Positions 512 to 60,812 of a stretch of DNA of 64,000 nt are shown piece by piece. How positions within the stretch are numbered: position 1 is the stretch's first letter; the number at the start of each line of letters is the position of its first letter. Location of the stretch: positions 186,001 through 250,000 of IMG/VR virus record IMGVR_UViG_3300049793_000366, one strand, 5' to 3'. Made by a program: the position numbers and the translations under genes. Below the pieces are notes generated by a model. That model ran no database searches. It was not told where the DNA came from and saw nothing but the letters and a program-made list of their open reading frames with translations.

Positions 512-520
512 TAATATATA
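512..520 (+). promoter_or_regulatory. Putative late promoter TAATATATA
   Basis: Exact motif 29 nt upstream of ATG 550; recurs upstream of many structural genes. Confidence 0.6.
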
Positions 521-549
521 ATATCACAAAAATTCAATAAAGTTTACTT

Positions 550-1638
550 ATGTCTAAATATATCAGAAGCTTCGAAAACCACAGACTTTCTTCAATAGAA
601 GATAGAGCTATTGATAAATTTATCAATGAAGGTTGGTTAGATGACCAAATGAAAACAGCATCAGCAGCTATAAAAGGATATTTGGGACAAATTACTGCTC
701 CTTTCAAGAGTGTTATTAAAGATATTAGAAAGGGTATGGATAATGAGAAGATAAAAACTTCATTATCAAACTCACTTGACAACGCATTTAAGAATGCTAA
801 TAAGTCAGTGGATGCTATTAAAGACGAAGCAGATTTAGCTAAGATTGTACCAGACTTTCAGGGTGTTGTTTCTCAATTAGCACAACAATTGGAGAAAGAG
901 ATAGCAACAGTAAAAGAATCTAAATTATTTGAAGCAAATGCTCAGGATTCATTAATTGGCGCGAAGGTTATACTTAATATGGTTACTGATAAAATGACCA
1001 AGTTGAAGCAAAATTTTGACCAGCAAGTTGCAAAGGCTAAAGATTTAGCTACTAAGAAAGCGGCTGTTAAGAAAGAGCTTAATAATATGTACACTCAATT
1101 ACAAAATGATATTAAGTCGATTGATATTGATGCACTGGTTAAGGAATATAAAGAGAAGAATAAGATAGAAGGAAATAAGAATGGTATAATTTTGGACTGG
1201 GGTGATGTTGAGATTACATTACAAAGTATGGAAGGTGAAACTAATCCATCTGGTCAGAAATTTGAAATTGGTTATTATAAAGTAGTTAAAACGGGGTCTA
1301 AGAAAATATTAGAAAATGACGTTGTTAAGATAACTGGTATTGTTAAGAAGGGTGATAAAGCTAAGTTTACCGAAGTACTAAGAGGTAACAAGCCATTTAA
1401 GATTGATAATAAAGACTTCTATGAAACTGGTAATATTGAAAGACTTGTAGTTGATGATAAAGAAGTTACGGAACATAACTTTGGTGGTGAGAATCAAGAT
1501 CCAAACTCTGACTTGAAATCTAAATTAGCGAAGATTAAAGGTGATGCTGATAAAATGGATGTAGTTAATAATTTAGTTGATAATCTTGACAATCCTGATA
1601 AGATGAAACAAGTCGCAGAAATTTTAGATAAAGGATAA
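550..1638 (+). CDS. Hypothetical helical protein with capsid-targeting-like N-terminus (probable virion/internal protein)
   Basis: 362 aa ORF starting MSKYIRSFENH; late motif upstream. Confidence 0.6.
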   Translation: MSKYIRSFENHRLSSIEDRAIDKFINEGWLDDQMKTASAAIKGYLGQITAPFKSVIKDIRKGMDNEKIKTSLSNSLDNAFKNANKSVDAIKDEADLAKIVPDFQGVVSQLAQQLEKEIATVKESKLFEANAQDSLIGAKVILNMVTDKMTKLKQNFDQQVAKAKDLATKKAAVKKELNNMYTQLQNDIKSIDIDALVKEYKEKNKIEGNKNGIILDWGDVEITLQSMEGETNPSGQKFEIGYYKVVKTGSKKILENDVVKITGIVKKGDKAKFTEVLRGNKPFKIDNKDFYETGNIERLVVDDKEVTEHNFGGENQDPNSDLKSKLAKIKGDADKMDVVNNLVDNLDNPDKMKQVAEILDKG

Positions 1639-1898
1639 TGATTAAGCAAATTAAAAAAGTAATTAGTGAGCTTGAATTGAAATCAAATGAAAGCTTTAGT
1701 GCCTTTTCTGACTACATTGAGAATATGAGAGAGAAGGGTAATTTTGAATTACTTAACAACGCTGTTTCGCGTAAGTTTGGATTTGACTATTATAGTTATA
1801 AAGGTATAACTATTGCTGACTATAAGAAAATTGTTTATAATGGATTTAAGAATAATGGTAGACTTGGTATAGAATCCGTTATTAGAAAAGCTATTTAA
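1638..1898 (+). CDS. Hypothetical protein
   Basis: 86 aa ORF coupled to the upstream gene (TAATG). Confidence 0.6.
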   Translation: MIKQIKKVISELELKSNESFSAFSDYIENMREKGNFELLNNAVSRKFGFDYYSYKGITIADYKKIVYNGFKNNGRLGIESVIRKAI

Positions 1899-2659
1899 TA
1901 CCAAGAGTGTTCCGGATTCTCTTCGAATATAGAATCTAAATAATTCTCAATAACACTACTCATATCTTTTGTTTTATACATTTCAGCAGGACCTTCTGGT
2001 CCTATGTGTACTAAGTAACATGAATCTACATTAATACCGTATTGCTTAAGAATAACTTTATATAAATGTAATTGTATTGAGTATTCGGTTTGATGGTTTT
2101 TGTAGAAGTTATCAAATGGTGTTAGTAAATTTTCAGATTTACCCCAATCTGAATCATCTGTTGTGAATTTCTTATTTGTCTTCCAATCTAAAATAAATAT
2201 CTTATCGTTGTAGATGAATATAGAATCTATCATACCAGCTATTCTCCATTTTCTTGAGAATATTCTTTGTTCAAATATAACTGGTGTTAGTTTGTGTAAC
2301 TTCTGTGCATATAGAATATTGAATTTATTTATTCTCGATGTCACATCTAAATTACTTGGAAGTGGTTGCCAAATTTGGTTGAAATAATTCTCAATCCAGT
2401 TGTGTGTAGCAGTACCTAATTCATTCGCATAATCATTCAGCTTTCTCCATTGTTCTAAGATAAATTCTTGAGGAACACCTTGCTCGTCTGCTTTTACTTT
2501 TGACCAATGGTCTGTTTCGAATGGTTTGTGAAATTTAGAAATAAGCTGAGTTACTGAAATAAATCGCTTACCCTTGTATGTATATTTGTGATATACAGGG
2601 TCGAATTTGAAATCAGGATCGTCAAAAACCTCAAGCTTTTTTATAATGTCATTCTTCAC
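1895..2659 (-). CDS. PD-(D/E)XK (RecB-like) exonuclease
   Basis: GTATHNWIE...EQRIF...AGMIDSI...ILDWKT...QLHLY motifs; no Fe-S cysteine cluster. Confidence 0.85.
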   Translation of the reverse strand: MKNDIIKKLEVFDDPDFKFDPVYHKYTYKGKRFISVTQLISKFHKPFETDHWSKVKADEQGVPQEFILEQWRKLNDYANELGTATHNWIENYFNQIWQPLPSNLDVTSRINKFNILYAQKLHKLTPVIFEQRIFSRKWRIAGMIDSIFIYNDKIFILDWKTNKKFTTDDSDWGKSENLLTPFDNFYKNHQTEYSIQLHLYKVILKQYGINVDSCYLVHIGPEGPAEMYKTKDMSSVIENYLDSIFEENPEHSWY

Positions 2660-3406: not shown

Positions 3407-4066
3407 TTACTTTCTCTTAATAAGAATTTCGTCAATTATACCGTATGCTTTAGCTTCTTTAGCTGTCATCCAGTAATCTCTGTCTGAATCTATGCTTACT
3501 TTGTCGAATGGTTGACCAGTGTTGTCGGATAATATTTCAGAAAGCTCTCTTTTTAGAGAATGTATGTGTTTTGATTCAATCTCGATATCAGATGCTTGTG
3601 CGTAGCCTAAATAGCCAAGTGGTTGGTGTATCATAGTTCTGGCTCTTCTAAGTGATTTTCTCTTACCTTTTGTACCGCAAGATAGAATCACAGCAGCCAT
3701 AGAAGCCGCGATACCAGTATTTATAGTAACTATATCATTTTTAATAAATTCCATTGTATCAACAATACCCAAACCATCGTAAATTGAGCCACCGCCTGAG
3801 TTTATGTATATTTTGATATCCTTTTCGCTGTCTAATTGCTCTAAATATAGAAGCTGTGCCTTAATGACATCAGACATTTCATCATAAATTTCGCCATTTA
3901 AGAAAATTATTCTGTCTTGTAGGAGTTTGGTAAATACATCTAAAACCATACCATCAAACTTTTGATCCACTATTGATGTTGTTAGATTGTTTTTATATCT
4001 GTGTTGTTTAGCTGATGATATACCGGATGATAGCATCCATTTCTTATAGTCTCGTTGGTCGTTCAT
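3407..4066 (-). CDS. clpP: ATP-dependent Clp protease proteolytic subunit
   Basis: LLQDRIIFL...YINSGGG...AASMAAVIL (catalytic Ser)...MIHQP (catalytic His)...DRDYWM. Confidence 0.95.
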   Translation of the reverse strand: MNDQRDYKKWMLSSGISSAKQHRYKNNLTTSIVDQKFDGMVLDVFTKLLQDRIIFLNGEIYDEMSDVIKAQLLYLEQLDSEKDIKIYINSGGGSIYDGLGIVDTMEFIKNDIVTINTGIAASMAAVILSCGTKGKRKSLRRARTMIHQPLGYLGYAQASDIEIESKHIHSLKRELSEILSDNTGQPFDKVSIDSDRDYWMTAKEAKAYGIIDEILIKRK

Positions 4067-4605: not shown

Positions 4606-4614
4606 TAATATATA
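4606..4614 (+). promoter_or_regulatory. Putative late promoter TAATATATA
   Basis: Exact motif 5 nt upstream of ATG 4620. Confidence 0.6.
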
Positions 4615-4619
4615 CGAAT

Positions 4620-5909
4620 ATGATTAAAAAATTTGAAGATTATAGCTCATTTCCAAGTGAACCAAGAAAGGAACTTGTTTATTATAGTTTCGACTGGGAT
4701 GATAATATTCTACATATGAATACAGTCATACATATGGAAAAGCTTGTTGGTAGTGAATGGACGCCAGTTGATATATCGACTGAAGAGTTCGCTAAGATAA
4801 GAGGTGATAGAGATAATTATAAATTATATAACGAGAATGCTGAAAGTGCTTTCTGTGAATTTTGTGATAGAGGACCTCGTGGTTCGAGTGCTTTCTTAGA
4901 AGATGTTAAAGATTCTGTTAAGAATGGTGGCTTTGCGCCATCGTGGTCTAAGTTTATAGATTGTATAGTTTCTGGCTCTTTATTTGCAATCATCACGGCT
5001 CGTGGACACGAACCAAATTCTATAAAAGAAGCAGTTAGATGGATTATTGAAACACAACTAACAACTGAACAACAGAGTAAATTGGTTAGTAATTTATTAG
5101 CTTTTCATAAAGAATTTAATAACGAACCAAAGGAACAAATAATTGAAGATTATTTAGATTTGAATTTTTATTTTGGTGTATCATCGAATACATTTATAAA
5201 TCGTTTTGAATCTGAGTTAAATGTAGCTGATACAGCTATGAATCCAGAAAAGGCTAAAGAAGTAGCTTTGAAGTTTTTCATTGAGAAAACACACGCTTAT
5301 GGTAAAATGATTAATGCTAAAGTTAAGATAGGATTCTCTGATGATGATATTAAAAATGTTGAACATATTGAAGAATTAATGAAAGGCGAACTTTCGTTGA
5401 AATACCCATTATCTACACTAAGAATATATGATACTTCTGAGCGTGGTTATAGAAAAATAAAAATAGAAGAGTCTATGGACGAAAGTATTAATCCTAATTA
5501 TGAATTCTTTGTTGTATATAGCAATGAACGAATTGTATCTGGTTGGGAATCCGAAGAAAGTGCTTGGGATGACTATAATAAGCGAGTTGAGAAAAATATG
5601 GATATGGAAAATTCCCTATCGGTGTATAGTGTAGAAGAGTGTGATGAGAATGGACTTGATCCATTTGATTGTGATAATTGGATAAGTGAGGGTGATAATT
5701 TCTTTGAATTTAGTGAAGAAGGAAATGATGAAGAAATCATGGAAAAAAAGAAGTTTAAAAAAGCAACAAAAGCTACTGAGTCTCAGACTGGTGCGGCTAT
5801 TGATTTGAAAGATGCTTTACCTAAAGAAGATATGGGTTGTGATAAGGATGATGCTGTTACTGAGTCTAAATCTCGCTTAAAAACATTTAAAACATTTTCT
5901 AAAAAATAA
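4620..5909 (+). CDS. HAD-superfamily hydrolase-like protein with acidic C-terminal extension and capsid-targeting-like termini
   Basis: FDWDDNI (motif I DxD), ITARGH (motif II), GFSDDD (motif IV); begins MIKKFEDY, ends SRLKTFKTFSKK. Confidence 0.65.
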   Translation: MIKKFEDYSSFPSEPRKELVYYSFDWDDNILHMNTVIHMEKLVGSEWTPVDISTEEFAKIRGDRDNYKLYNENAESAFCEFCDRGPRGSSAFLEDVKDSVKNGGFAPSWSKFIDCIVSGSLFAIITARGHEPNSIKEAVRWIIETQLTTEQQSKLVSNLLAFHKEFNNEPKEQIIEDYLDLNFYFGVSSNTFINRFESELNVADTAMNPEKAKEVALKFFIEKTHAYGKMINAKVKIGFSDDDIKNVEHIEELMKGELSLKYPLSTLRIYDTSERGYRKIKIEESMDESINPNYEFFVVYSNERIVSGWESEESAWDDYNKRVEKNMDMENSLSVYSVEECDENGLDPFDCDNWISEGDNFFEFSEEGNDEEIMEKKKFKKATKATESQTGAAIDLKDALPKEDMGCDKDDAVTESKSRLKTFKTFSKK

Positions 5910-7957: not shown

Positions 7958-8383
7958 ATGCCAATAAAAATGTTTCAGGAGTTTTCTAACGAATCGGTGA
8001 ATAATATAATAAGCTTCAAATTGCTTGATATTGAACCAATTGAAAAAAGATTATCGGATCTTAAAACTTCTAATATTGACTATACAATAACGCCTGCTAT
8101 CTATAACTATTATCAAGGAAAACTGATATCTGTTAAGAGGATTAATCCTAAATTTAGCATGGTTGATAATCTAAGAGCGATACGAAAGAATGCTGTTGGT
8201 GAGATTTCACCAGGATTCAGAATTGATATTAAGATACCAGATTCTACAAAGGATAATACGTGGTTGTTTGATAAATTAGCATCAATTGAACAAGATTTAT
8301 CACCAGTATTTAGGTTTGATTCTAAGCAAGACCATGAGGGATATCATGTGGATTTTATATATAAAACAAAAGAAAAACTTTGA
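7958..8383 (+). CDS. Hypothetical protein with capsid-targeting-like N-terminus
   Basis: Starts MPIKMFQEFSNES. Confidence 0.6.
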   Translation: MPIKMFQEFSNESVNNIISFKLLDIEPIEKRLSDLKTSNIDYTITPAIYNYYQGKLISVKRINPKFSMVDNLRAIRKNAVGEISPGFRIDIKIPDSTKDNTWLFDKLASIEQDLSPVFRFDSKQDHEGYHVDFIYKTKEKL

Positions 8384-9835: not shown

Positions 9836-10293
9836 TAGTTCAGTAGGTCATTAAGTTTTTCATCGCGTACTAACTCTGGTGCTTCATCTAACCATTCAAC
9901 ATCCTTAGAATCTATCCAAGAGTTTTCGTATAAATTCTTCATCATTTCTTTATACGAATCTGTTGAGTATTCGCTTTGGTTGACTTGTATTTCTAATATA
10001 CCTATTTTGGATTTATCTTTAGACCTTTCAATCTCATATACCTCATAGACAACATCTATATTTGTTTTTCGTTTCGAGTCTCTATCAGTTGATGAAAGAC
10101 TTCTCTCCATCAAACCTTTTCTACCAGTACCTCTTAGTTGTACTGGTACGGGTTTACTCGGTAAGGTTGGTTGTTGTACGGGTTGTGGTTTTTGACCTTC
10201 AACCAATAGTTTCAAGTTTTTATTAATGCTTGAGAAACCTTGCATATTGGAGACGATGAAGCCTCCTATAAATCCTATTAACAAATATATCAT
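9835..10293 (-). CDS. Hypothetical membrane-anchored protein with C-terminal RD tag
   Basis: N-terminal hydrophobic segment; ends VRDEKLNDLLN. Confidence 0.65.
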   Translation of the reverse strand: MIYLLIGFIGGFIVSNMQGFSSINKNLKLLVEGQKPQPVQQPTLPSKPVPVQLRGTGRKGLMERSLSSTDRDSKRKTNIDVVYEVYEIERSKDKSKIGILEIQVNQSEYSTDSYKEMMKNLYENSWIDSKDVEWLDEAPELVRDEKLNDLLN

Positions 10294-32046: not shown

Positions 32047-32055
32047 TATATATTA
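32047..32055 (-). promoter_or_regulatory. Putative late promoter TAATATATA
   Basis: Exact motif 4 nt upstream of ATG 32042. Confidence 0.55.
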
Positions 32056-46412: not shown

Positions 46413-46414
46413 AA

Positions 46415-46678: not shown

Positions 46679-46682
46679 GTGT

Positions 46683-51012: not shown

Positions 51013-51038
51013 AATATATACTAAAAATTAAAATTAAA

Positions 51039-51882: not shown

Positions 51883-53385
51883 ATGTCATCACCACTGGGT
51901 TTAACTACATTTACGACTGGCTCTGCTAACGCAAACAACACGACTAATACAACTGCGACTGCATCGCAATCACAGCAAGCCCAGGGTCAAAATAACCAAC
52001 AGTCTGGTTATAATTACAATTCGTATGATTTTAAGAAATATTCATCTGCTCCTAATGTTAGAAATAGAGCAAAGAAATCTATATTTTCAAGTAACACTGC
52101 ATTCACGACTAAGTTCGAACACAGCAACGACACATACGATATCAGAACTAATTCAATTATAAAATATTGCAATAACCCAAGAACTCCTGCTATGAAATTA
52201 AAAGCAGAAGATTTCGCGTATTTAAGAAATCTTGGTGTTTACTCAAATAACCGTTTAGTTGTTGTTAGAAGATTTCCAGCTCCGGTTGGTAACGATTTAA
52301 CTATAATAAAGGCTACTCCTATATCTACATTGATTTCATGGGTTCCTGATAATGAGAAAAACTTTCTAAGCGTATCGTTTGGTGAAGAATGGACTAATGC
52401 TAAGGCATCATTAAAAGATTTATTAAACGATGTTGGTAATGATTTATCAAGTCCTGAGAATAGAACTGGTGGCGGTGGTAAGGGCTTAGGTAATATGCTT
52501 GCGGGTGGTTTAAATGCCTTACCATTACCGGGTTTTATGGAAGGTGTTCAATTAAGAATTTTAAATAAATTAGGGTATACCGAGAATGATGCGAATTCAA
52601 TTCCATCTGGTAACCCAAATATTATAAAGAGTGCTAAGGTTAGAAAAACTTTAGATAAAGATGCTGAGGGTTCTGGTCTTAAATGTAAAATATCAATTGA
52701 TTTTGAAACTGAATATGAACAGAAGTTTATAGACGGTGTTGACCCGACTCTTGTATATCTTGATGTATTATCAACTGTATTGAGATTTGGAACATCTGAA
52801 TCTAAATTCATTATTAATACTAAATTACAATCACAGGGAGCAGACATTATAAACAAAATTAAAGCTGGTCAGTGGATAGAAGCAATCGAATTATTTGTTG
52901 GTGCGGCTATCGCGGCTATGAAAGAGATTGCGGCTGATTTAATATCAACCGTTGTAGAAGGTTCTAAAGCTGTTGCTAAGGAAGCAAGTAAAGGAGATTT
53001 AGAAGCAACTGTTAATGCAATATTTGATACGTTTTTGAAATCTGCGGCTAGTACGATAATTTCAAAATATAAAGTAAGACTTGGTGGTATCATGTCAGCA
53101 TTATCTGGTGAGCCATCTGCACCTTGGCACGTTACGATTGGTAACCCTAAGAAACCAGTTTTTAGCTCAGGTGATATGTTAGTAGAAGAAGTTAATGTTG
53201 ACTTGGGTAATATATTATCATTCAATGACCTTCCTTCTAATATTAAAATCAAATTTACACTTACTAATGCCAGACCATTGGGAGCGCAAGAAATATTCGA
53301 GCGATTCAATACTGGTGCTGGAAGAACATATGCGGCGAAGCCTAATAACTTCGAAGAGAGAGATATAAAAATAGAAAAGAAATAA
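51883..53385 (+). CDS. Putative baseplate / tail-tube initiator protein
   Basis: First gene of the operon containing gp53-like, hub and gp5-like genes; tube-fold-like C-terminal segment. Confidence 0.55.
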   Translation: MSSPLGLTTFTTGSANANNTTNTTATASQSQQAQGQNNQQSGYNYNSYDFKKYSSAPNVRNRAKKSIFSSNTAFTTKFEHSNDTYDIRTNSIIKYCNNPRTPAMKLKAEDFAYLRNLGVYSNNRLVVVRRFPAPVGNDLTIIKATPISTLISWVPDNEKNFLSVSFGEEWTNAKASLKDLLNDVGNDLSSPENRTGGGGKGLGNMLAGGLNALPLPGFMEGVQLRILNKLGYTENDANSIPSGNPNIIKSAKVRKTLDKDAEGSGLKCKISIDFETEYEQKFIDGVDPTLVYLDVLSTVLRFGTSESKFIINTKLQSQGADIINKIKAGQWIEAIELFVGAAIAAMKEIAADLISTVVEGSKAVAKEASKGDLEATVNAIFDTFLKSAASTIISKYKVRLGGIMSALSGEPSAPWHVTIGNPKKPVFSSGDMLVEEVNVDLGNILSFNDLPSNIKIKFTLTNARPLGAQEIFERFNTGAGRTYAAKPNNFEERDIKIEKK

Positions 53386-53867
53386 TGAACTTTAAATCAT
53401 TGGATAATCTCAAGAGAGATGACGTTACTAAGTTATACGACTTAACAAAAGCAACATTTATTAATCCAAGTGAAGCTTTGTCTATCCCTATTTTTGAATT
53501 TGTTGTAGAAGAACATTTTGCTGGTAGAATTGATTTAATTTGTAATGAATTATATGAGACTCTTGACTACGTTGAGTTCTTATTGAGGTTTAATGATATA
53601 GACCATCCATTGAATATACCTAAGGATAGGTCAATATTTTATGTTGAGAAGGAATCTGTTTCTTTATTTGATTATACTGATATTGAAGTGGAAGCTAAAG
53701 ATGCAATCAAGCGTTTATCGAATAATAATAAGCGTCAGAGAATTGACAAGAAACGTGAGGCCGCGATTAATAATCCAACCTTACCACCTACTATATCTGA
53801 TGACGTAACGGATCCTGTACAAATAAGAGGTAATCAAATTATCATCGGAGAAAATTTATTTAGATAA
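53385..53867 (+). CDS. gp53-like baseplate wedge (LysM-like) protein
   Basis: GRIDLIC.ELY.....VE.LL.FN.I..P..I. Confidence 0.75.
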   Translation: MNFKSLDNLKRDDVTKLYDLTKATFINPSEALSIPIFEFVVEEHFAGRIDLICNELYETLDYVEFLLRFNDIDHPLNIPKDRSIFYVEKESVSLFDYTDIEVEAKDAIKRLSNNNKRQRIDKKREAAINNPTLPPTISDDVTDPVQIRGNQIIIGENLFR

Positions 53868-56800
53868 TGGCTAACATTAAAGAAACTGTATTTAAGAGTG
53901 TCGCTGATATAGATACGTTCTTTAAAAAGTACGAATCTAACGGGTTTACTGATTGGTTTAATAAAAATCATGGTGGTAAAAATGGCTTCGCTGCTCAGGG
54001 TAATCGTTCTTCAAAGAAGATTACTGCTCCTGATAAATGGACTCAAGTATGGGGTCATATTAAAGATATATTCAATAGGGATTCTGTTAACTTAGTAGAG
54101 TTCTTAGCAATTAATACAATTATAATTAACGAAACTGGTGGGTCATTTAAACCATTATCAGAGGGTGTTAATAAAAACTCTGCGTCATCACATCCAGGTG
54201 TTGCTTATGCCTTTGATGCTATTTCTGGTTTAAAGAAATCTTATAACTCTTTAGGTGGTTTAAATAAAACAGCCTATGAATTATATCGCGATGCTGACTT
54301 TAAAGCCGCGCATGGTCACAAACCGTATGGTAATATTCTAAAAGATACAACTGATGTTAGATGGAAGTCTGATACATTTCCAATTGGTTTTAGTGGTGGT
54401 TCGGTAGAGAAAGAGGTAGATAGAGATTTGCTAAGTAATACATTCGTAGGTGAGGCGGATTTTCAGAAATTCAGAGGTCGTGGTTTTATACAAACTACTG
54501 GACGTGGTAACTACAAAAAGATTATAGAGTATATAACTACATATAGTGGTACTAATAAAACTATTTTAAGTTACAAGAGTAAATGGTCTCAACACGGTAC
54601 TAACTATGATAAGATTGCTACGATAAGTACCAATAAGGATTGGGATGACCTATTCATAAATAGTGATTCTATTATTCCTTGTTATGCTGTTTATGTACAT
54701 GGTAAAGCTGGTGGGTATTTAACAATAAGTGTTTCGAATGACAATCAGGTAAAATCGGGAGTTAGAAAAGTAGCGAGTAAAATTGCTGGTGCTAATGCTA
54801 AAGATTATATTGATTTATTTGAACAAAGAGTTTTGCAACAATTGAATGCTATTGATAGTTCATCACCAGCTCCAACTGCGGCAACTGCTTCTCCTGCGGC
54901 AACTCCGGCACCTGCGAGTACTGCTGATACGTTCAATACGAATGGTGAAGATCCAGAAGAATCGTGGTATAAATTCCTTGAAGATACTGGTAGAGAAGAG
55001 ATATCTGATAATAGCTCTAATAATAACAACAACGGAAATAATAACAATAATTCTGGTGAACAAAAGGATAGTGGTAGTCAAGGTTCAATTGAGAATGTAA
55101 TGAAGCCTACTATCAAGATTGACCCAATTACTCTTGAAGTACAAGGCTCAACTACTACAAAAACTGATGTAGCTGGTAATCTTGGATTCTTCCCGTTTGT
55201 TTGGTATAATGGTATTCAAATCCAATATGCCGACATAACATCTTTCAATTTAACATCGAGTAGTTTACTACCAACTGTTTCTGTTACATTCTTTGACTCA
55301 ACTGGTCTTATGGATGAGGCTGGATTTCCGTTAGATGATACAAAGTTGAAAGTGTTTTTAAATCCGAGAAAGCCAGGATTTAAGCCAATCTTAATTGAAT
55401 TTAAAATATCTAACTTCGCTATAACTAGTAACAAAACATATGTTATTGAAGGTGTAATGAATGTTAATAAATTCTATTTAAAGAAATATGAAGCATATAC
55501 TAATATGTCATCGTATGATGCTTTAGTAGAGTTTTGTAAGAGAGCTGAAATTGGATTTAATTCTAATGTTAGAAGTACTGATGATAGAATGAACTGGATT
55601 TCAGTTGGTGAGTCAGGATTTGATTTTGTAAATAGTATAATTGATTACTCATATGTATCTGATGATGGATTCATGTGGGGATTCGTAGATTTTTATTATT
55701 GCTTTAATTATATTGATATTGAAACTGAATTTAAGAGACAAATTGATTCAATAGAAGGATTGGATGGTTCTGGTGGATTACATCAAGGATTACAATCTAC
55801 TGTACCAAGTGATACACAGAAGTTATTTTTAACTAATGATAAAGCATTATCTGATTCAAGTAACTATTTCTATAATCATACTATTATGAATAACTCAACA
55901 GCTATTTCACTTAGAAAGGGTTATTTAAATACTGTTAAGTTTTACGATAGAAACGCAAAAGATTTCATGGTATTCGATATCGATTCTATTACATCCGAAG
56001 GTGATAAGACTATTATTATGAAAGGTTCTCCACAAGATGAAGAATATTTTAAAGAGCATACTACATCAACTTTGATGGGTAAGTTAGACCAGGATAATAT
56101 GCATAAAAACTATCACTATGCTTGGGTTCAGAATTCTCATAATATTGAGGATTTAACGAAGATTGGTGTTAAGTTACAATTGCCAAATCCTAACTTCAAC
56201 TTATATAGATTTCAAAAAATAAATGTTGTGATATCAAATCACACACAGAAGTTTGCAAAAGAATTAGTGAACTATCGTCTGAGTGGTGCTTGGTTAATAA
56301 CTGATATATCATTCATTTTTACAAATGGACAATTTAAGCAAGAGGTTACTCTTGTTAAGAGAGAATTAGGATTAAGCCCAGAAGAGGTTAAGAATGAGGG
56401 TGCTTCATCAGCAGCTAATAATTCACCAGCTCCTTCTAACGCGAGTCCTGCTGATGGTGGTTCTAATGGATTAGAAGGTGTTAACTTTGATGATCCAGCT
56501 CCGGGTGCTACTCAATCTGATTTAGTATTTACGCCTGAGGGGCCTGCTTATGAATCAGCTACGGCTTCTGCTACGGCTTCTAATCCACCAGCGGCTACCG
56601 CATCTGGCACAGCTTCTACACAAGCGGCTACGGCTTCTGCTACTCCTGCGGCTGTTGAGTTCAATGTTAAGTATGTTGACCAATTTACTGCGGTGCTTAC
56701 TTTAAGTGATGATGCTTATCGTTTAGCTTTTGTTGATTATACATTCAATGATAGTACTGGTAGTGGTGATAGTTCGTTATATACGTATTCAACACCGAAG

Positions 56801-56986
56801 AAGGAGAATAAGTGGACATTTGAATTAGCTGACTTCTATGCGAATGGTGTATTGGATAAAGATGCTAAGGATGGTGTTCTTAAATTAAACTTCATAGCGA
56901 AGAAAGTTGCAACTGATGGTAAAACTTTCTTATCAAGTGGAGATGTTCAGAAGAATAATGTTATTTCTTTTAAATATACTAAGTAA
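53867..56986 (+). CDS. Baseplate hub-like protein with N-terminal GH19 muramidase domain
   Basis: I.NETGG.F and FRGRGFIQTTGRGNY (GH19 signature); central gp27-like region; S/A/T/P linkers; position between gp53-like and gp5-like genes. Confidence 0.7.
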   Translation: MANIKETVFKSVADIDTFFKKYESNGFTDWFNKNHGGKNGFAAQGNRSSKKITAPDKWTQVWGHIKDIFNRDSVNLVEFLAINTIIINETGGSFKPLSEGVNKNSASSHPGVAYAFDAISGLKKSYNSLGGLNKTAYELYRDADFKAAHGHKPYGNILKDTTDVRWKSDTFPIGFSGGSVEKEVDRDLLSNTFVGEADFQKFRGRGFIQTTGRGNYKKIIEYITTYSGTNKTILSYKSKWSQHGTNYDKIATISTNKDWDDLFINSDSIIPCYAVYVHGKAGGYLTISVSNDNQVKSGVRKVASKIAGANAKDYIDLFEQRVLQQLNAIDSSSPAPTAATASPAATPAPASTADTFNTNGEDPEESWYKFLEDTGREEISDNSSNNNNNGNNNNNSGEQKDSGSQGSIENVMKPTIKIDPITLEVQGSTTTKTDVAGNLGFFPFVWYNGIQIQYADITSFNLTSSSLLPTVSVTFFDSTGLMDEAGFPLDDTKLKVFLNPRKPGFKPILIEFKISNFAITSNKTYVIEGVMNVNKFYLKKYEAYTNMSSYDALVEFCKRAEIGFNSNVRSTDDRMNWISVGESGFDFVNSIIDYSYVSDDGFMWGFVDFYYCFNYIDIETEFKRQIDSIEGLDGSGGLHQGLQSTVPSDTQKLFLTNDKALSDSSNYFYNHTIMNNSTAISLRKGYLNTVKFYDRNAKDFMVFDIDSITSEGDKTIIMKGSPQDEEYFKEHTTSTLMGKLDQDNMHKNYHYAWVQNSHNIEDLTKIGVKLQLPNPNFNLYRFQKINVVISNHTQKFAKELVNYRLSGAWLITDISFIFTNGQFKQEVTLVKRELGLSPEEVKNEGASSAANNSPAPSNASPADGGSNGLEGVNFDDPAPGATQSDLVFTPEGPAYESATASATASNPPAATASGTASTQAATASATPAAVEFNVKYVDQFTAVLTLSDDAYRLAFVDYTFNDSTGSGDSSLYTYSTPKKENKWTFELADFYANGVLDKDAKDGVLKLNFIAKKVATDGKTFLSSGDVQKNNVISFKYTK

Positions 56987-56997
56987 CAACACTCAAT

Positions 56998-57006
56998 TAA
57001 TATATA
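56998..57006 (+). promoter_or_regulatory. Putative late promoter TAATATATA
   Basis: Exact motif 4 nt upstream of ATG 57011. Confidence 0.6.
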
Positions 57007-57010
57007 GTTA

Positions 57011-58699
57011 ATGGCATTAGATAACATCATAGGTAACATTCCTTTTTTCAATCAGGACAAGACTGGTCAGCAATCTACTGAGAAGAGAAGCGAGTATTTG
57101 GAAAATAAAACAAATCCAGAACATCGTGGTTTAGCTAATATAGAAGATTTCTATTTTAATCCTGATATACACAAGGAAGACGATAATAGAAGTATCATTG
57201 GTCACATATATGATAGAATTGATAAGAGTGCAACGCCATTATCATCGTCTATAACAGACGCTAAAACTAAAGACCAATCTTATAGAGATACTATTACTCA
57301 AGTCTTTAAAGATAAGAAAACTGAGTATTTCAAATACGGTATTTATATCGATGATAGTACTCACAACGAAGACCCAACTGTTTTGGGTTTTGACTTAGTT
57401 ATAGATGTTAATAATTCTCCGCTATTTACAGAGCTACCAGAGTTCTTTAAAGCATTTGCTAATATAGATGAAGTAAACAATAGGAAAGACGTTTATACGC
57501 AATTTTTAGAAGAATTGGGTAGATATTTTGAAACTGGTATTCCGGGTTCAAATTCTGAGTTCTCATCATTCAAAGCTCACTATATTAAGTCTGTATCTGG
57601 TTTAGATTTACTCGGAGAGAGTATAAGTGGTGGTTCATTTGATGAGGCTGGTAAAAAACAATTTACCGATTATGGTAAAGATTTACTAAAGGTAAACTTA
57701 TATGAAGATGTTACATTGAGTACATCACACTTAGCATTATTGTATAAAACATTAATGTGGTCAAAGATTAGTGGTAGATTAGTTATACCTGAGAATTTAT
57801 TAAGATTTGATATGTATGTTCAGATTTCCGAAATAAGAAATTTCAACGCTGTTAAGAAGTCATTAGATGGTGATAACGGTGGTGAGATGTTAGAAGTTGT
57901 TAGAGCTAATGTATCGAGATATGTTTATAAATTATATGACTGTCAATTATACTTTGATAAGTTACCACATGGTGACCAAATATCAATTGCTGAATCTAAG
58001 GCTATCGATGGTTTTGATTTTCAAATTAAATATAAATTCTCTACTGTTCAATTTGAAAGATTCATGCAACAGAATGATGTAATTAATAGAAGTATTGGTT
58101 CTGGTCCAAACGACCTTACGAGTAGAACAACAGATTGGGAAACATATTTAACGTCTCAACGAAAGTATATTACGAATGAGGATTTATTCCCATTGTCTGT
58201 TAATATATCAGGTTATGATGATTCAAGTGGTACGTCATCAAGTGGTGACCCTAATATGGGTAATAAAGCTGAGTATTTAATTAGAAGAAGACCAGTTGAA
58301 CCACAAGCATACTATCAATATACTGGTCAGGATAAAAAAGTTCCTGAGGCAGAAAAACAAGGTAGTGCGGCAGAAGTTGAGAAGAATACTTTTGGTGATA
58401 AGCTAAAAGATGCAGTTAGTGATTCTGTTGGTAATAGTATTGAGAGTTTGAAAAAATCAGCAATGAATTTAGCAAAACAAAAGGCAAACGAATTGATTGG
58501 TTTAGTTAATTCAACTCTTGGTAAAGTGCTATCAAATGCTGGTCTTGGTAAGGGTATCTACGACCCAAGTAACGTTTATGATAAACAAGGACCTCTTGAG
58601 AAATTAGTTAAATCTGAATTTAGAAAGTTTGGTAACTCTACTCTTAACTCAGTATTGGGTGTGGGTCAAAACGAGTTGAAAAATTTATTTAAGAGATAA
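57011..58699 (+). CDS. Putative baseplate / tube-junction structural protein
   Basis: 562 aa gene within the baseplate operon. Confidence 0.55.
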   Translation: MALDNIIGNIPFFNQDKTGQQSTEKRSEYLENKTNPEHRGLANIEDFYFNPDIHKEDDNRSIIGHIYDRIDKSATPLSSSITDAKTKDQSYRDTITQVFKDKKTEYFKYGIYIDDSTHNEDPTVLGFDLVIDVNNSPLFTELPEFFKAFANIDEVNNRKDVYTQFLEELGRYFETGIPGSNSEFSSFKAHYIKSVSGLDLLGESISGGSFDEAGKKQFTDYGKDLLKVNLYEDVTLSTSHLALLYKTLMWSKISGRLVIPENLLRFDMYVQISEIRNFNAVKKSLDGDNGGEMLEVVRANVSRYVYKLYDCQLYFDKLPHGDQISIAESKAIDGFDFQIKYKFSTVQFERFMQQNDVINRSIGSGPNDLTSRTTDWETYLTSQRKYITNEDLFPLSVNISGYDDSSGTSSSGDPNMGNKAEYLIRRRPVEPQAYYQYTGQDKKVPEAEKQGSAAEVEKNTFGDKLKDAVSDSVGNSIESLKKSAMNLAKQKANELIGLVNSTLGKVLSNAGLGKGIYDPSNVYDKQGPLEKLVKSEFRKFGNSTLNSVLGVGQNELKNLFKR

Positions 58700-60273
58700 T
58701 GACAAATCGCGATGATTTGAAGAATAGAACTTTTATTGCCATTGTTGAAGATAACGAAGATCCTAAAAAGATAGGTCGTATTAGAGCAAGGGTATTGGAT
58801 GTATTTGATGAGATTCCTGCTGACCAAATACCTTGGGCATCGCCTTGGAAGGACTTAAACGGTAACTCATTCAATATTCCAGACAAAGGTAAAGTTGTAA
58901 CTGTTATTTTCGAAGATGGTAATATTTACTCACCTGAGTATATCTATGCTGACCACTATAATATAAATTTAGCGACTAAGTTAAATGAATTGAGTGGTGC
59001 GAATTATACTTCGATGAAGTCTATAATTTTTGACCACAAGACACAATTATATGTTAATGATAAAGAAGGATTGAAGTTTGACTATAAGTTCAATAATATA
59101 AATATTAAAGATACTGAGATTAATATTAACTTAAAAGATAACTTTTCTAAGGTAAATATTGGTACAGCTATCGCTTCACAGAGAGCAATCTTAGGTGACC
59201 ACTTTTTAAATTGGTTTGATGATTTCGTAGATAACTTATTGGGTTCTAATGCGGGTCCATACTTGGGAAACCTTGGTGCGCCAGTAGTTGCTAACCCTAC
59301 ATTCATTAATTGTCTTTTAAAATACAAAGCTCTTAAAGAGCCTAAGTTTCTATCACATCATATTAATTTGGTAGATAATGAAGACGTTGAGAAGCTTGAC
59401 CGTGTTTGTAATTCACAAATTGGTGATAAGTGGAAATCAACCGTTCGTAAGAATGATTTAGTTTCTAAAGAACCAGTTAAGTATAAACCAAAAGCTGGTC
59501 AATCAACAGATCCGGCATCTGGTGAGGTTACACCACCTACTGATGATAATGGTAATCCAGTACAAACACAACCAAATACAGCCGCACAGAGTCAACCAGA
59601 AGTTGAGCCGAGTGTACATGATGATATCAATAAGATATTTGAGGCTATGAAGGCTAAGGGTTATAAGATATTGGATAGACCATATGAAATAAACATAGTT
59701 GGTATTCGTAGACAATATGAAGGTATGGCTTACTCAAACTCATATATGGATTCTCTATATGCTATCTATAAAGATGATTCTGGTAACTGGGCTAAATCTA
59801 CATACCCTATTTCTACAATTCCTGGTTTGAGTATTAAAGATCCACAGACTAAGAAAATGGAATCTCTTAAGAAGTATAAGAAAGATAAGGCTACTAATTC
59901 ATTGGTAGCAAGAAGACCATTCATCGGTACTTTACAAGAAGCACAATATCTTGACGTATTCTATATTGGTGAGCATTTGGATTCACCAGCGATGAAAACT
60001 AAAGGTAAACAAAAAGCATATCGTGATGAGAACTTATCTGAGAATGTAATCACTTATACGAGTAAGAATAATGAAGGTAACTTTGGTATGTTAATTCATA
60101 AGGGTTATGTTAAAGGTACATCAAGTGCGGTTAATAACTGGTCAGAAGGTTGTCAGGTATTCAGAGATGAAGCACATTTAACACATTTCTTCGACCTATG
60201 TAATAAGCACAAAGCTAAGTATGGTAATACTTTCAACTATACATTGATGCTTGCTAAGGATGTTAATCTATAA
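58699..60273 (+). CDS. gp5-like central spike (OB-fold) fused to a YkuD/L,D-transpeptidase-like domain
   Basis: DP...GRIRARV...IPWASP...IP..G..V.V.FEDG...P.Y; C-terminal NIVGIR...ST.PG...IHKG...WSEGCQVF. Confidence 0.8.
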   Translation: MTNRDDLKNRTFIAIVEDNEDPKKIGRIRARVLDVFDEIPADQIPWASPWKDLNGNSFNIPDKGKVVTVIFEDGNIYSPEYIYADHYNINLATKLNELSGANYTSMKSIIFDHKTQLYVNDKEGLKFDYKFNNINIKDTEININLKDNFSKVNIGTAIASQRAILGDHFLNWFDDFVDNLLGSNAGPYLGNLGAPVVANPTFINCLLKYKALKEPKFLSHHINLVDNEDVEKLDRVCNSQIGDKWKSTVRKNDLVSKEPVKYKPKAGQSTDPASGEVTPPTDDNGNPVQTQPNTAAQSQPEVEPSVHDDINKIFEAMKAKGYKILDRPYEINIVGIRRQYEGMAYSNSYMDSLYAIYKDDSGNWAKSTYPISTIPGLSIKDPQTKKMESLKKYKKDKATNSLVARRPFIGTLQEAQYLDVFYIGEHLDSPAMKTKGKQKAYRDENLSENVITYTSKNNEGNFGMLIHKGYVKGTSSAVNNWSEGCQVFRDEAHLTHFFDLCNKHKAKYGNTFNYTLMLAKDVNL

Positions 60274-60798
60274 GTAATCAACGTAGAACGGGTAACCTCT
60301 AATTGGCTTTTCTTTTATTCCCCTGCTTCTTGCGCTTGCTCCTACATAATCCTTCGGATTGTATATTGCTATGTGAAAACTTATTTTATCTTTAATTGAT
60401 TGTGGAAGTGCATTCAAGTAATCAGCCAAATCTTCTATACTTGTTGGTAATTCTTTAGTACTACCACCGCCTTTATTTGTAAGATTTGTTACTCTCGCTT
60501 GTGCTATTAATCCGATATCTCTGTGCATACCATTAAACCTTTTAATGGCTTGATGTGCTAACTTTGATACCTCTTCGAATTTATCAGTATTGGTTACACA
60601 TTCTATATCTACGCTATTTACTTCTTCTGTTGCTTTATCTGTCTTGTATCGATGACCAAGTGATTTAAAGCTGTAATAATCTAACTCTTCTAATAGTGAA
60701 GAGAATACATATTCTAACTCTTTTTTAGTCAATTCCAATGCTGAATAAGCAATCTTTGGTTCTGAGAGATAATCTTTGAACTTCTTAAGTAACTTCAT
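60268..60798 (-). CDS. Hypothetical protein with capsid-targeting-like N-terminus
   Basis: MKLLKKFKDYLSE. Confidence 0.6.
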   Translation of the reverse strand: MKLLKKFKDYLSEPKIAYSALELTKKELEYVFSSLLEELDYYSFKSLGHRYKTDKATEEVNSVDIECVTNTDKFEEVSKLAHQAIKRFNGMHRDIGLIAQARVTNLTNKGGGSTKELPTSIEDLADYLNALPQSIKDKISFHIAIYNPKDYVGASARSRGIKEKPIRGYPFYVDYL

Positions 60799-60803
60799 AT
60801 AAA

Positions 60804-60812
60804 TATATATTA
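60804..60812 (-). promoter_or_regulatory. Putative late promoter TAATATATA
   Basis: Exact motif upstream of ATG 60798. Confidence 0.6.

What the first reader, a model, noticed from the sequence alone, without database searches (positions are those of the whole stretch)
512..60812. Tag identity tracks promoter class, suggesting a two-address system for early and late proteins
Seen: of the 14 N-tagged genes, 8 have an exact TAATATATA directly upstream, 3 have a one-base variant, 2 are second genes of such units, and one (20053) is marginal. Eight of the 11 C-tagged genes lie in units headed by host-type Bacteroidota -33/-7 promoters (11471, 12924, 29073) or a -7 element (32334). The exceptions are 15248, 21756 and 38369, the last with a TTATATATA variant. 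No protein carries both tags. Inference: the phage sorts its accessory proteome by short terminal addresses, with late N-tagged proteins going into the capsid and early C-tagged proteins going to a second destination or fate.
Basis: inference. Interest (0 to 1): 0.75.

Follow-up and report, generated by a model that had tools for sequence, protein, structure and literature searches.

The report
Two terminal peptide tags track promoter class
In this 508-kb soil "huge phage", about a quarter of all proteins carry either a 10-residue N-terminal tag or a short C-terminal tag. The tags never occur together and are split almost perfectly between phage-type (late) and host-type (early) promoters, which suggests a virus-encoded protein-sorting system whose destinations are still unproven.

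Summary
The window lies in a 507,910-bp Mahaphage-type huge phage with a predicted Bacteroidota host.

- **Tags.** Genome-wide, 78 proteins start with M-K-[HY]-[LI]-K-x-[FY]-[EN]-x-[FY]. Another 127 end with R-[DEN]-x-[KQ]-[IL]-[ND]-x-[IL]-[IL]-x(0-4). Fewer than 1 of each is expected by chance, and no protein has both.
- **Peptide level.** Both tags use normal codon frequencies. They sit on unrelated, fast-evolving proteins, and orthologues keep them.
- **Promoters.** The nearest upstream promoter is TAATATATA-type (L) for 65 N-tagged genes and host -33/-7 type (E) for none. For C-tagged genes the split is 15 L and 69 E. The pattern repeats in two related 640-kb phages.
- **L is late.** Separate L elements precede the T4-type portal, the fused prohead protease-scaffold and the Gp23 capsid gene.
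- **N-tag.** It matches the T4 capsid targeting sequence in length, register and key residues 4 and 7, so capsid targeting is plausible but unproven.
- **C-tag.** Its reader is unknown. A phage ClpC-like/ClpP protease is a candidate. A sliding clamp is unlikely.

No expression or proteomic data exist. I found no prior description of these tags in the literature I could search.

The parts
550..1638 (+). N-tagged gene (MSKYIRSFEN...), 362 aa; L element at 512-520
4620..5909 (+). N-tagged gene (MIKKFEDYSSF...), 429 aa; leaderless L element at 4606-4614
7958..8383 (+). N-tagged gene (MPIKMFQEFS...); L element at 7925-7933
15763..15954 (+). N-tagged gene (MRYIKLFEDF...), 63 aa; variant L element GAATATATA at 15749-15757
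20053..20559 (+). Marginal N-tag candidate (MKRFTDKLNE...); fails the PSSM; TAATATACA at 20009-20017
24183..24410 (+). Weak N-tag (MKKFTQVREE...); fails the PSSM; exact L element at 24155-24163
32404..33407 (+). Two-gene L unit with two N-tagged genes: 32404-32994 (MRIKNFSEFS) and 32994-33407 (MKHIKRFENI). L element at 32373-32381
45999..46678 (-). Two-gene L unit with two N-tagged genes: 46415-46678 (MKNIQKFEKF) and 45999-46412 (MRLKKFNELF, true start at 46412). L element at 46683-46691 (-)
48724..49587 (-). Weak N-tag (MSKKKIYNFLSF); fails the PSSM; exact leaderless L element at 49592-49600 (-)
51039..51314 (+). N-tagged gene (MIKKYNEFNH...); variant L element AAATATATA at 51012-51020
60268..60798 (-). 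N-tagged gene (MKLLKKFKDY...); leaderless L element at 60804-60812 (-)
60862..61161 (+). N-tagged gene (MKHLKTFEHF..., best PSSM score in the window); variant L element TTATATATA at 60832-60840
9014..10293 (-). Two C-tagged genes: 9014-9835 (...HREVSLNKVL) and 9835-10293 (...VRDEKLNDLLN). They lie downstream of the host-type promoter whose -7 element is at 11471-11478 (-)
11503..12340 (-). Two C-tagged genes: 11503-11841 (...LRDTKITQIFDDED) and 11999-12340 (...QRDLKIDYIID). They belong to the unit headed by the -33/-7 promoter at 12924-12931 (-)
15248..15748 (+). C-tagged gene (...RRDAQLNQLFDNL); no recognised promoter upstream
21756..21998 (+). C-tagged gene (...SRDQKLNSILD), 80 aa; no recognised promoter upstream
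26559..26894 (-). C-tagged gene (...IRDMNIETVIR). It lies in the long unit headed by the -33/-7 promoter at 29073-29080 (-), which probably also holds FolD and RNase H
27578..28741 (-). Weak C-tag (...DDREEGLVKIMN, PSSM 2.7), same unit as 26559
32053..32307 (-). C-tagged gene (...KRKENIDKLLS) behind a -7-only element at 32334-32341 (-)
38369..38764 (+). C-tagged gene (...IRDKNIDRLLQ) with a leaderless host-type -7 element TATATTTG at 38356-38363
51883..60273 (+). Late tail/baseplate operon ending in the gp5-like hub at 58699-60273. L elements at 51855-51863 and 56998-57006
35609..38320 (+). 903-aa protein conserved among huge phages, function unknown. L element at 35578-35586
3407..4066 (-). 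Phage-encoded ClpP, a candidate component of a C-tag reader
   Evidence: PF00574, E=6e-68
16348..18213 (-). Phage-encoded DnaK/Hsp70; considered as a tag reader and judged unlikely
   Evidence: sequence; reasoning in the report

Best explanation
Mahaphage-type huge phages label a large part of their fast-evolving accessory proteome with one of two short terminal peptides. The label matches the time of expression.

**Shown**
- The tags are real, peptide-level and strictly terminal.
- They are mutually exclusive.
- They sit on unrelated proteins, and orthologues keep them.
- They are partitioned by promoter class.

**Inferred (N-tag)**
- The N-tag is M1-K2-[HY]3-[LI]4-K5-x6-[FY]7-[EN]8-x9-[FY]10, followed by an E/D/S-rich stretch.
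- It probably works like the T4 capsid targeting sequence. A small basic and hydrophobic N-terminal helix on late proteins docks onto the acidic, repeat-rich scaffold part of the fused prohead protease-scaffold.
- The carrier is then enclosed in the prohead and later delivered with the DNA.

**Inferred, more weakly (C-tag)**
- The C-tag is [K]-x-E-h-R-[DEN]-x-[KQ]-[IL]-[ND]-x-[IL]-[IL], within about 0-11 residues of the C-terminus.
- It is the exposed end of a C-terminal amphipathic helix on small early proteins, read by one common partner.
- My best guess is that it is a handle for timed removal by the phage's own ClpC-like unfoldase with ClpP. Docking to some other hub is nearly as likely.
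For: **Tags are real**
- Regex counts are 82 and 78, against 1.7 and 13 expected.
- PSSM counts are 127 and 78, against fewer than 1 expected.
- Without any PSSM, 96 of 128 proteins ending in [IL]xx[hh] have Arg four residues before the first hydrophobic position.
- The control phage PTm1 has 0 tags in 194 genes.

**Tags are peptide-level and modular**
- Codon usage in the tags follows genome usage.
- Tagged proteins form 118-124 and 70-73 unlinked families.
- 15 of 19 C-tag orthologues keep the tag, while only 6 of 236 untagged proteins have a tagged orthologue.
- Key tag positions are conserved above the protein body, the opposite of untagged termini.
- The N-tag starts at residue 3 in 52 of about 70 cases. 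The C-tag has 0-4 trailing residues in 127 cases.

**Partition by promoter class:**

**L is late:** L elements lie 22-31 nt upstream of the portal, protease-scaffold and Gp23 capsid genes, and head the tail/baseplate operon.

**Parallel with the T4 CTS**
- T4's CTS is MKTYQEFIAE. Targeting depends on residues 4 and 7, and it is carried by diverse, poorly conserved internal proteins.
- The scaffold has about 12 repeats, YSEYLAENLDKNI, each with a T4-type L/I-A-E site, followed by an acidic tract.

**C-tag and Clp**
- A genuine ClpP is encoded.
- The ClpC-like ATPase has a GVGF loop.
- C-tags make up 17%, 14.5% and 7.4% of genes in the three genomes with strong ClpP, and 0.6% and 0.1% in the two without.
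Against: **General**
- There are no expression, proteomic or binding data.
- The one complex prediction gave no answer.

**N-tag**
- Residue 10 is F/Y, not the Glu that T4 cleaves after, and [LI]xE is not enriched after the tag.
- Carriers are acidic, unlike the basic T4 internal proteins.
- 78-106 carriers per genome is far more than in any known CTS system.
- The tag is more frequent on leaderless genes, 46% against 24%.

**C-tag**
- The ClpP co-variation rests on five genomes and is confounded by phylogeny.
- 34 other proteins share the phyletic profile, and ClpP itself does not have it exactly.
- The variable tail after the motif does not fit recognition of a free carboxylate.
- The phage's own tmRNA tag is unrelated.
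- The ClpC-like protein lacks its N-domain.
- The promoter class of clpP is unresolved.
- 15 C-tagged genes map to L units and 43 are unassigned.
Confidence: 0.4

Rival explanations
1. The C-tag is a docking or localisation motif and not a degradation signal. It would bring many small early effectors to one hub, such as a host machine like the ribosome, RNA polymerase or membrane, or a phage-built compartment.
For: - The near-invariant Arg together with Asp, Lys and an h-x-x-h-h face looks like a specific helix-in-groove motif of the LxxLL type.
- The variable 0-11-residue tail fits docking better than recognition of the terminus.
- The region before the tag is poor in Gly and Pro and rich in Glu and Gln, so the tag continues a helix.
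- One carrier has a ribosomal L7/L12-like domain.
Against: - No candidate hub was found. The 34 proteins sharing the phyletic profile include SpoVR, tRNA synthetases, kinases and a phosphatase.
- Tagged proteins are not enriched in transmembrane-like segments.
- It is unclear why effectors with different targets would share one address.
Confidence: 0.25
2. The tags are not addresses. They are the only surviving conserved helices of very old, hyper-divergent paralogous families of small phage proteins. They correlate with promoter class only because each family expanded within one temporal module.
For: - C-tagged genes lie in tandem arrays of 60-100-aa genes, mainly at 460-508 kb.
- Profile iteration links 27 proteins, 18 of them tagged, into one family.
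- The pre-tag region shows a loose F/Y periodicity.
Against: - With tags trimmed, 118 of 127 C-tagged and 70 of 78 N-tagged proteins stay unlinked even at phmmer E<0.01.
- Carriers range from 50 to 936 aa and include ankyrin-repeat and L7/L12-like proteins.
- The motifs are fixed to the very termini.
- They are conserved above the protein body, whereas untagged termini are conserved below it.
Confidence: 0.15
3. The N-tag serves gene expression and not protein sorting. The first ten codons of late, often leaderless, mRNAs would be constrained for translation initiation or mRNA stability.
For: - The tag is strictly registered to Met-1.
- It is enriched on leaderless L genes, 30 of 65 against 13 of 54, p=0.014.
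- Lys is the commonest second residue overall.
Against: - Synonymous codons in the tag follow genome usage.
- Substitutions keep residue class: F/Y, L/I, K/R, E/N.
- 35 N-tagged genes are operon-internal and 13 are leadered.
- Untagged leaderless L genes lack the motif.
- The tag is kept, with sequence drift, across five genomes.
Confidence: 0.1
4. The C-tag is a sliding-clamp-binding (PIP-box or T4 gp43-tail-like) motif that tethers early proteins to the replisome.
For: - The h-x-x-h-h geometry near the C-terminus has the spacing of PIP-type motifs (and my own knowledge of PIP boxes).
- The phage has T4-like replication proteins: a gp32-like SSB and a split family-B polymerase.
Against: - The polymerase's C-terminal piece ends ...LTVIMDIFGGL. 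That is a T4 gp43-like tail and is unlike the C-tag.
- No DnaN, gp45 or PCNA family match was found in the genome.
- No protein with a recognised replication domain carries a convincing C-tag.
Confidence: 0.05

Closest known systems
T4 capsid targeting sequence (CTS, MKTYQEFIAE) of internal proteins IPI-III
   Same: - About 10 residues, registered to Met-1, starting 'MK'.
- Conserved hydrophobic or aromatic residues at positions 4 and 7, which are T4's targeting determinants (PMC9026906).
- Carried by diverse, non-homologous, poorly conserved proteins that are made late.
- The phage has a T4-type portal, a Gp23 capsid protein and a prohead serine protease with a scaffold core.
   Different: - Residue 10 is F/Y, not the Glu that T4 cleaves after, and no (L/I)xE site is enriched after the tag.
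- Carriers are acidic, not basic.
- There are 78-106 carriers per genome compared with a handful in T4.
- The protease is fused to the scaffold and is closer to the phiKZ S80 type.
- Packaging is untested.
Propeptide-bearing ejection proteins of giant phages (phiKZ, SPN3US)
   Same: - Giant capsids that hold dozens of different proteins.
- These proteins are processed by an S80/S77-type prohead protease (PMC7411985, PMC10052503).
   Different: - Those propeptides share only a cleavage motif (S/A/G-x-E).
- They have no common 10-residue N-terminal address.
C-terminal degrons read by Clp proteases (ssrA tag, MuA)
   Same: - A short signal close to the C-terminus.
- The phage encodes its own ClpP and a ClpC-like unfoldase with a ClpP-docking loop.
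   Different: - The sequence is unrelated to the ssrA tag and to the phage's own tmRNA tag, AKSKTTATQVEELEIA.
- The motif is followed by a variable tail.
- It is genome-encoded on about 17% of proteins.
- Degradation is untested.
C-terminal tails that bind the T4 gp45 clamp (gp43, gp33, gp55), and PIP boxes
   Same: - A short hydrophobic motif at the extreme C-terminus.
- It is shared by several unrelated proteins.
   Different: - The phage's polymerase carries a different, T4-like tail.
- No clamp gene was recognised.
- The carriers are small ORFans.
Bacteroidota sigma-A -33/-7 promoters, and T4-type late promoters that have only an A/T-rich -10-like element
   Same: - The E class is TTTG-N~20-TAnnTTTG.
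- The L class is an A/T-only 9-mer with no conserved upstream element, heading structural genes.
   Different: - The L sequence is TAATATATA, not T4's TATAAATA.
- Many E sites have an extended tCCGTAtATTT(G/A) form.
- Both classes have a frequent leaderless geometry.
- No gp55-like factor was sought.

Membership tests
T4 capsid targeting sequence (CTS) system | About 10-residue peptide at the extreme N-terminus, registered to Met-1 | tested here: met
   The 8-mer core starts at residue 3 in 52 of about 70 carriers. Consensus.
T4 capsid targeting sequence (CTS) system | Targeting determinants at residues 4 and 7 (hydrophobic or aromatic) | tested here: met
   Residue 4 is L or I in 75 of 78 carriers. 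Residue 7 is F or Y in 78 of 78, though the PSSM selection favours these residues. T4 data from PMC9026906. This is pattern agreement only, with no mutagenesis.
T4 capsid targeting sequence (CTS) system | Carried by diverse, non-homologous, poorly conserved proteins | tested here: met
   70-73 unlinked families. Few have orthologues.
T4 capsid targeting sequence (CTS) system | T4-type prohead: gp20 portal, gp23 capsid protein, serine prohead protease and a scaffold core to dock on | tested here: met
   PF07230 E=5e-60 and PF07068 E=4e-27. phrog_207 E=9e-31, with weaker S80 and S77 matches. Repeat-rich acidic scaffold.
T4 capsid targeting sequence (CTS) system | Removal by the prohead protease at an (L/I)-x-E site ending the CTS (Glu at residue 10) | tested here: not met
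   Residue 10 is F/Y. [LI]xE in residues 9-25 occurs in 27% of carriers against 20% of controls, not significant. Cleavage elsewhere cannot be excluded.
T4 capsid targeting sequence (CTS) system | Carriers are physically present inside virions | not testable with these tools
   No proteome exists. The nearest cultured relative, PTm1, lacks the tag.
Clp-type C-terminal degron | Signal at or near the C-terminus of substrates | tested here: met
   127 carriers have 0-4 trailing residues and 21 more have 5-11.
Clp-type C-terminal degron | A cognate unfoldase and ClpP are available | tested here: met
   ClpP PF00574 E=6e-68. ClpC-like protein with AAA_2 E=3e-57 and a GVGF loop.
Clp-type C-terminal degron | Resemblance to the ssrA/tmRNA tag, or a fixed terminal carboxylate context | tested here: not met
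   The phage tmRNA tag is AKSKTTATQVEELEIA. The tail after the motif varies in length and sequence.
Clp-type C-terminal degron | Tag abundance co-varies with presence of the protease across genomes | tested here: inconclusive
   Five of five genomes are consistent. The pattern is confounded by phylogeny and is not unique to ClpP.
Clp-type C-terminal degron | Tag-dependent degradation | not testable with these tools
   Needs a biochemical or in vivo assay.
Sliding-clamp-binding C-terminal motif | The replicative polymerase carries the same motif | tested here: not met
   The PolB C-terminal piece ends ...IMDIFGGL.
Sliding-clamp-binding C-terminal motif | A clamp gene is present | tested here: not met
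   No match to PF00712, PF02916 or PF00705. A divergent clamp could have been missed.
Bacteroidota sigma-A promoter (-33 TTTG / -7 TAnnTTTG) | Two elements with about 19-21 nt spacing upstream of genes | tested here: met
   Aligned consensus ATTTg-N20-TAtATTTGtat from 80 sites. The extended tCCGTAtATTT(G/A) form is.

The most novel reading that the evidence does not exclude
These huge phages run a proteome-wide, two-signal protein-sorting system of their own. A CTS-like N-terminal address loads roughly 80-100 different late proteins into the giant capsid as an injected arsenal. A separate C-terminal address on roughly 130-150 early proteins is read by a dedicated phage-encoded receptor, either a degradation timer or a localisation hub. 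Together, about a quarter of the proteome would be routed by short linear motifs, somewhat like N- and C-terminal targeting signals in eukaryotic cells.
Probability: 0.3. Interest if true: 0.9.

Novelty: new variant of a known kind. Interest (0 to 1): 0.78.

Why it matters
**If the N-tag is a capsid address**
- It gives a sequence-based way to read the injected 'ejection proteome' of uncultured huge phages directly from metagenomes. That amounts to about 10% of their genes, nearly all of unknown function.
- It extends a mechanism known only from a few T4 proteins to a much larger scale.

**The C-tag**
- I found no described counterpart. One short motif on 15-17% of a virus's proteins implies a single reader acting on most early accessory proteins.
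- Either would be a new principle in the organisation of phage infection, and a practical handle for tagging or destabilising proteins.

**Promoters**
- The perfect partition by promoter class provides a free temporal annotation of hundreds of ORFan genes.

Tried and rejected
1. **DNA-level explanation of the tags.** Rejected. Synonymous codon usage in both tags equals genome usage.
2. **Simple paralogy.** Rejected by BLAST, phmmer and profile iteration on the tag-trimmed proteome.
3. **Expression data.** Only one DNA run holds the phage, a soil metagenome that is probably the source. No RNA run holds it. The read-laying run was therefore not used.
4. **Domain content of tagged proteins.** 40 were scanned and nearly all have no family match.
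5. **Phyletic profiling for a C-tag reader.** 34 candidates emerged, none telling. They include SpoVR, tRNA synthetases, kinases and an LMW phosphatase.
6. **Phospho-arginine degron** (McsB/YwlE/ClpC style). Dropped. There is no PF00217 kinase, and the ClpC-like protein lacks the N-domain that reads phospho-Arg.
7. **DnaK as C-tag reader.** Judged unlikely from established DnaK motif rules, because the tag core contains acidic and polar residues. Not tested.
8. **Complex prediction** of an N-tagged protein with the scaffold repeats. The tool returned 'no answer', so it counts neither way.
9. **Atlas look-alikes of the 903-aa late protein.** Scores were about 0.7, which are leads only. I do not call it a capsid protein.
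10. **Cultured relative with a virion proteome.** PTm1 lacks both tags, and its paper is not in the library.
11. **A 'replacement' C-tag in LR756501.** The DPYGEExW motif is real and peptide-level. It is often internal and is not partitioned by promoter class, so it is a different phenomenon.

Full report
**What the window is**

The window is bases 186001-250000 of a single 507,910-bp virus contig. It has 33% G+C and is estimated at 97% complete. The closest public records are the 634-735 kb 'Mahaphage' genomes LR745206 and LR756501-4. Their published predicted hosts are Bacteroidetes (PMC7162821). The contig carries 61 tRNAs and a tmRNA. I called 752 genes with a simple ORF finder of my own (ATG starts, longest ORFs, greedy non-overlap). 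Every count below depends on that calling.

**The tags**

The finding did not define them, so I derived them from the sequence.

- **N-tag.** Many proteins begin M-K-[HY]-[LI]-K-x-[FY]-[EN]-x-[FY].
- **C-tag.** Many proteins end R-[DEN]-x-[KQ]-[IL]-[ND]-x-[IL]-[IL] plus 0-4 residues. There is weaker conservation (K-x-E-h) just upstream.
- **Regex counts.** Plain regular expressions find 82 C-terminal and 78 N-terminal matches. The rate of the same cores at internal positions predicts 1.7 and 13.
- **PSSM counts.** Position-specific matrices give 127 C-tagged and 78 N-tagged proteins, with fewer than 1 expected for each.
- **The matrices did not create the signal.** Of 128 proteins that merely end in [IL]xx[hh], 96 have Arg four residues before the first hydrophobic position. 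An AT-rich Bacteroidota jumbo phage with the same head module, PTm1, has 0 hits in 194 genes.
- **Exclusivity.** No protein has both tags. About 13 would be expected if the tags were independent.

**The tags are peptide signals on unrelated proteins**

- Synonymous codons inside both tags follow genome-wide usage. For example, the near-invariant Arg uses all six codons in the expected proportions. This excludes a DNA or RNA element.
- With tags trimmed, the 127 C-tagged proteins form 124 BLAST families, or 118 phmmer components. The 78 N-tagged proteins form 73, or 70.
- Profile iteration links only one divergent family of 27 proteins, 18 of them C-tagged, in the array at 463-471 kb.
- The motifs are terminal. 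The N-tag core starts at residue 3 in 52 of about 70 cases. The C-tag has 0-4 trailing residues in 127 cases, 5-11 in 21 more, and lies elsewhere in only 24.
- Tagged genes are accessory and evolve fast. Only 19 of 127 C-tagged proteins have an orthologue in the closest relative. Fifteen of those 19 orthologues keep the tag, while only 6 of 236 untagged proteins have a tagged orthologue.
- At the constrained positions the tags are conserved, by residue class, above the protein body. Untagged termini are conserved below it (p=1e-4 and 6e-3).

**The promoters**

- **L class.** Upstream k-mer enrichment recovers ttTTAATATATA with no conserved upstream element. AATATATA lies within 60 nt of 121 starts, against 6.5 expected.
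- **E class.** The second class is the Bacteroidota type, TTTG-N~20-TAnnTTTG. It often takes an extended form, tCCGTAtATTT(G/A).
- **Geometry.** Both classes show a leaderless arrangement, with the element ending 4-5 nt before the ATG, and a leadered one.
- **L heads structural genes.** The T4-type portal (PF07230, E=5e-60), a 757-aa fused prohead protease-scaffold (phrog_207, E=9e-31) and the Gp23 capsid gene (PF07068, E=4e-27) each have their own L element 22-31 nt upstream. So does the tail/baseplate operon in the window.
- **Caveats.** A DnaB-like helicase also has an L-type element. 'Late' is therefore an inference and may include middle genes. E is 'early' only because it looks like a host promoter.

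**The association**

  - Three of the 14 N-tags are weak.
  - Gene 38369 has a leaderless -7 element, so it is probably not an exception.
- Genome-wide counts of the nearest upstream same-strand promoter are below (Fisher N vs C, p=5e-28).

| Gene set | L | E | Unassigned |
|---|---|---|---|
| N-tagged | 65 | 0 | 13 |
| C-tagged | 15 | 69 | 43 |
| Untagged | 184 | 212 | 151 |

- Counting each transcription unit once, 52 of 122 L units contain an N-tag and 11 contain a C-tag. Of 69 E units, none contains an N-tag and 36 contain a C-tag (p=5e-13 and 7.5e-11).
- Only three C-tagged genes have a proximal L element. Two of the 15 'C under L' cases are paralogues of the scaffold protein's C-terminus and are likely false tags.
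- The same pipeline gives p=6e-28 in LR756502 and p=2e-5 in LR756504.

**Distribution among relatives**

| Genome | N-tagged genes | C-tagged genes | ClpP |
|---|---|---|---|
| G000 (this phage) | 10.4% | 16.9% | strong match |
| LR756502 | 11.0% | 14.5% | strong matches |
| LR756504 | 4.9% | 7.4% | strong matches |
| LR756501 | 4.5% | 0.6% | none |
| LR756500 | 3.0% | 0.1% | weak matches only |
| PTm1 (150 kb scanned) | 0 of 194 genes | 0 of 194 genes | not checked |

No protein in any genome has both tags. The nearest cultured relative by capsid protein is PTm1.

**What the N-tag most likely does**

- In T4, a 10-residue N-terminal capsid targeting sequence (MKTYQEFIAE) carries diverse internal proteins into the scaffold core. 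Targeting depends mainly on residues 4 and 7, and processing on residues 8 and 10 (PMC9026906, PMC8442874).
- The N-tag has the same length, register and 'MK' start. Its conserved hydrophobic positions are exactly residues 4 and 7.
- The phage has the machinery such a signal needs. Between portal and capsid gene lies a protease fused to about 12 repeats of YSEYLAENLDKNI. Each repeat holds an L/I-A-E site matching T4's cleavage rule. An acidic tract follows. PTm1's orthologue is annotated 'prohead core scaffolding protein and protease'.
- I therefore read the N-tag as working like a CTS, but membership of that system is not established.
  - The T4-type cleavage site is missing.
  - The carriers are acidic.
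  - There are far more carriers than in T4.
  - Nothing shows that they are in virions.
- The one complex prediction returned 'no answer'.

**What the C-tag might do**

- The tag continues a helix. The region before it is poor in Gly and Pro and rich in Glu and Gln. It exposes R, D and K together with an h-x-x-h-h face.
- The phage encodes a genuine ClpP. It also encodes a ClpC-like double AAA+ unfoldase with a GVGF loop but no Clp_N domain. Strong ClpP is present only in the three C-tag-rich genomes.
- That link is weak. It rests on five genomes and is confounded by relatedness. Another 34 proteins show the clean phyletic profile.
- The tag is unlike the phage's tmRNA tag, and its variable tail argues against recognition of the terminal carboxylate.
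- A clamp-binding role is unlikely. The split family-B polymerase ends in a T4-like ...IMDIFGGL tail, and no clamp family was found.
- A phospho-arginine route was considered and dropped.
- I rank 'handle for timed Clp-dependent removal' slightly above 'docking to another hub'. Both have low absolute confidence.

**Novelty**

- I found no description of either tag, or of a tag-promoter partition, in the searchable literature.
- The N-tag is best seen as a greatly expanded variant of the T4 CTS idea.
- The C-tag has no known counterpart.

**Main limits**

- Gene calling is home-made.
- Promoters are motif calls only.
- 13 N-tagged and 43 C-tagged genes have no assigned promoter.
- There is no transcript, protein or binding evidence.

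Noticed in passing
G000 59956-60348 (- strand; outside the window): The phage encodes a tmRNA with an unusual tag peptide, AKSKTTATQVEELEIA, which aragorn does not recognise as a known tag. It also encodes 61 tRNAs, most of them in clusters at 319-328 kb and 391-421 kb.
   Followed up: partly
G000 442219-444348 (locus L003:226-2355): A 709-aa ClpC-like double AAA+ unfoldase. About 50 unique acidic residues replace the Clp_N domain. A UVR-like middle segment and a GVGF ClpP-docking-type loop are kept. The gene is conserved in LR756502 (66% identity) and more weakly in LR756501, which has no ClpP.
   Followed up: partly
G000 93393-95666 (loci L178 and L175): A 757-aa fused prohead protease-scaffold. 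It has about 12 tandem 13-residue repeats (YSEYLAENLDKNI), each containing an L/I-A-E site, then an E/G/D-rich low-complexity tract. Two 65-aa genes, at G000 271117 and 354264, are paralogues of its C-terminus.
   Followed up: partly
LR756501 (loci L030-L066): This 735-kb relative has its own recurrent peptide motif, (K)R(V/I)(F/I)S-x-L-D-P-Y-G-E-E-x-W. It occurs about 100-110 times. Forty copies lie at the C-termini of 39 unrelated families, and the rest are internal. It is absent from the other four genomes and is encoded with varied codons. It is not partitioned by promoter class, and five carriers also have an N-tag.
   Followed up: partly
LR756500 (loci L134-L157): C-termini are enriched in ...NADDFGF-like endings (10-13 proteins). 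These resemble the acidic/aromatic tails of replisome proteins.
   Followed up: no
G000 102467-103699 and 274856-276301: The family-B DNA polymerase seems to be split into two distant ORFs. Motif A lies in one and motif C in the other. The second ends in a T4 gp43-like tail, ...IMDIFGGL.
   Followed up: partly
window 49592-49633, 60804-60840, 15198-15206, 21727-21735: TAATATATA is nearly its own reverse complement (TATATATTA). Several divergent intergenic regions hold back-to-back L-type elements that serve genes on both strands.
   Followed up: no
genome-wide; e.g. window 4606-4620, 46678-46691, 38356-38369: Both promoter classes have a frequent leaderless geometry, with the -7/-10-like element ending 4-6 nt before the ATG. 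About half of the L-proximal genes have it (65 of 119).
   Followed up: partly
G000 11999-13507 (locus L159): A full-length SpoVR-like protein (PF04293, E=1e-161). It is more conserved between these phages (72% and 56% identity) than the capsid protein. It is absent from LR756501 and LR756500.
   Followed up: no
G000 67641-69392 (L005) and 426700-427353 (L017): Tagged proteins with recognisable domains: an N-tagged 583-aa ankyrin-repeat protein, and a C-tagged 217-aa protein with a ribosomal L7/L12 C-terminal-like domain.
   Followed up: no
G000 391182-391517 (L165): A 111-aa low-molecular-weight phosphatase with an intact C-X5-R loop. It is highly conserved (72% and 64% identity) and found only in the C-tag-rich genomes. 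No McsB-type kinase was found.
   Followed up: partly
window 3407-4066, 16348-18213, 29151-31040, 6845-7906, 38761-39225, 24868-25755: The window encodes a proteostasis and metabolism set that is unusual for a phage: ClpP, DnaK, an RNase R/II-type exoribonuclease, and apparent ThyA, DHFR and FolD genes. The last three were recognised from sequence only and were not scanned.
   Followed up: partly
whole record G000: IMG/VR classes the record as a 'provirus'. The contig nevertheless looks like a near-complete free huge-phage genome. I saw no flanking host genes, but I did not check the ends systematically.
   Followed up: no
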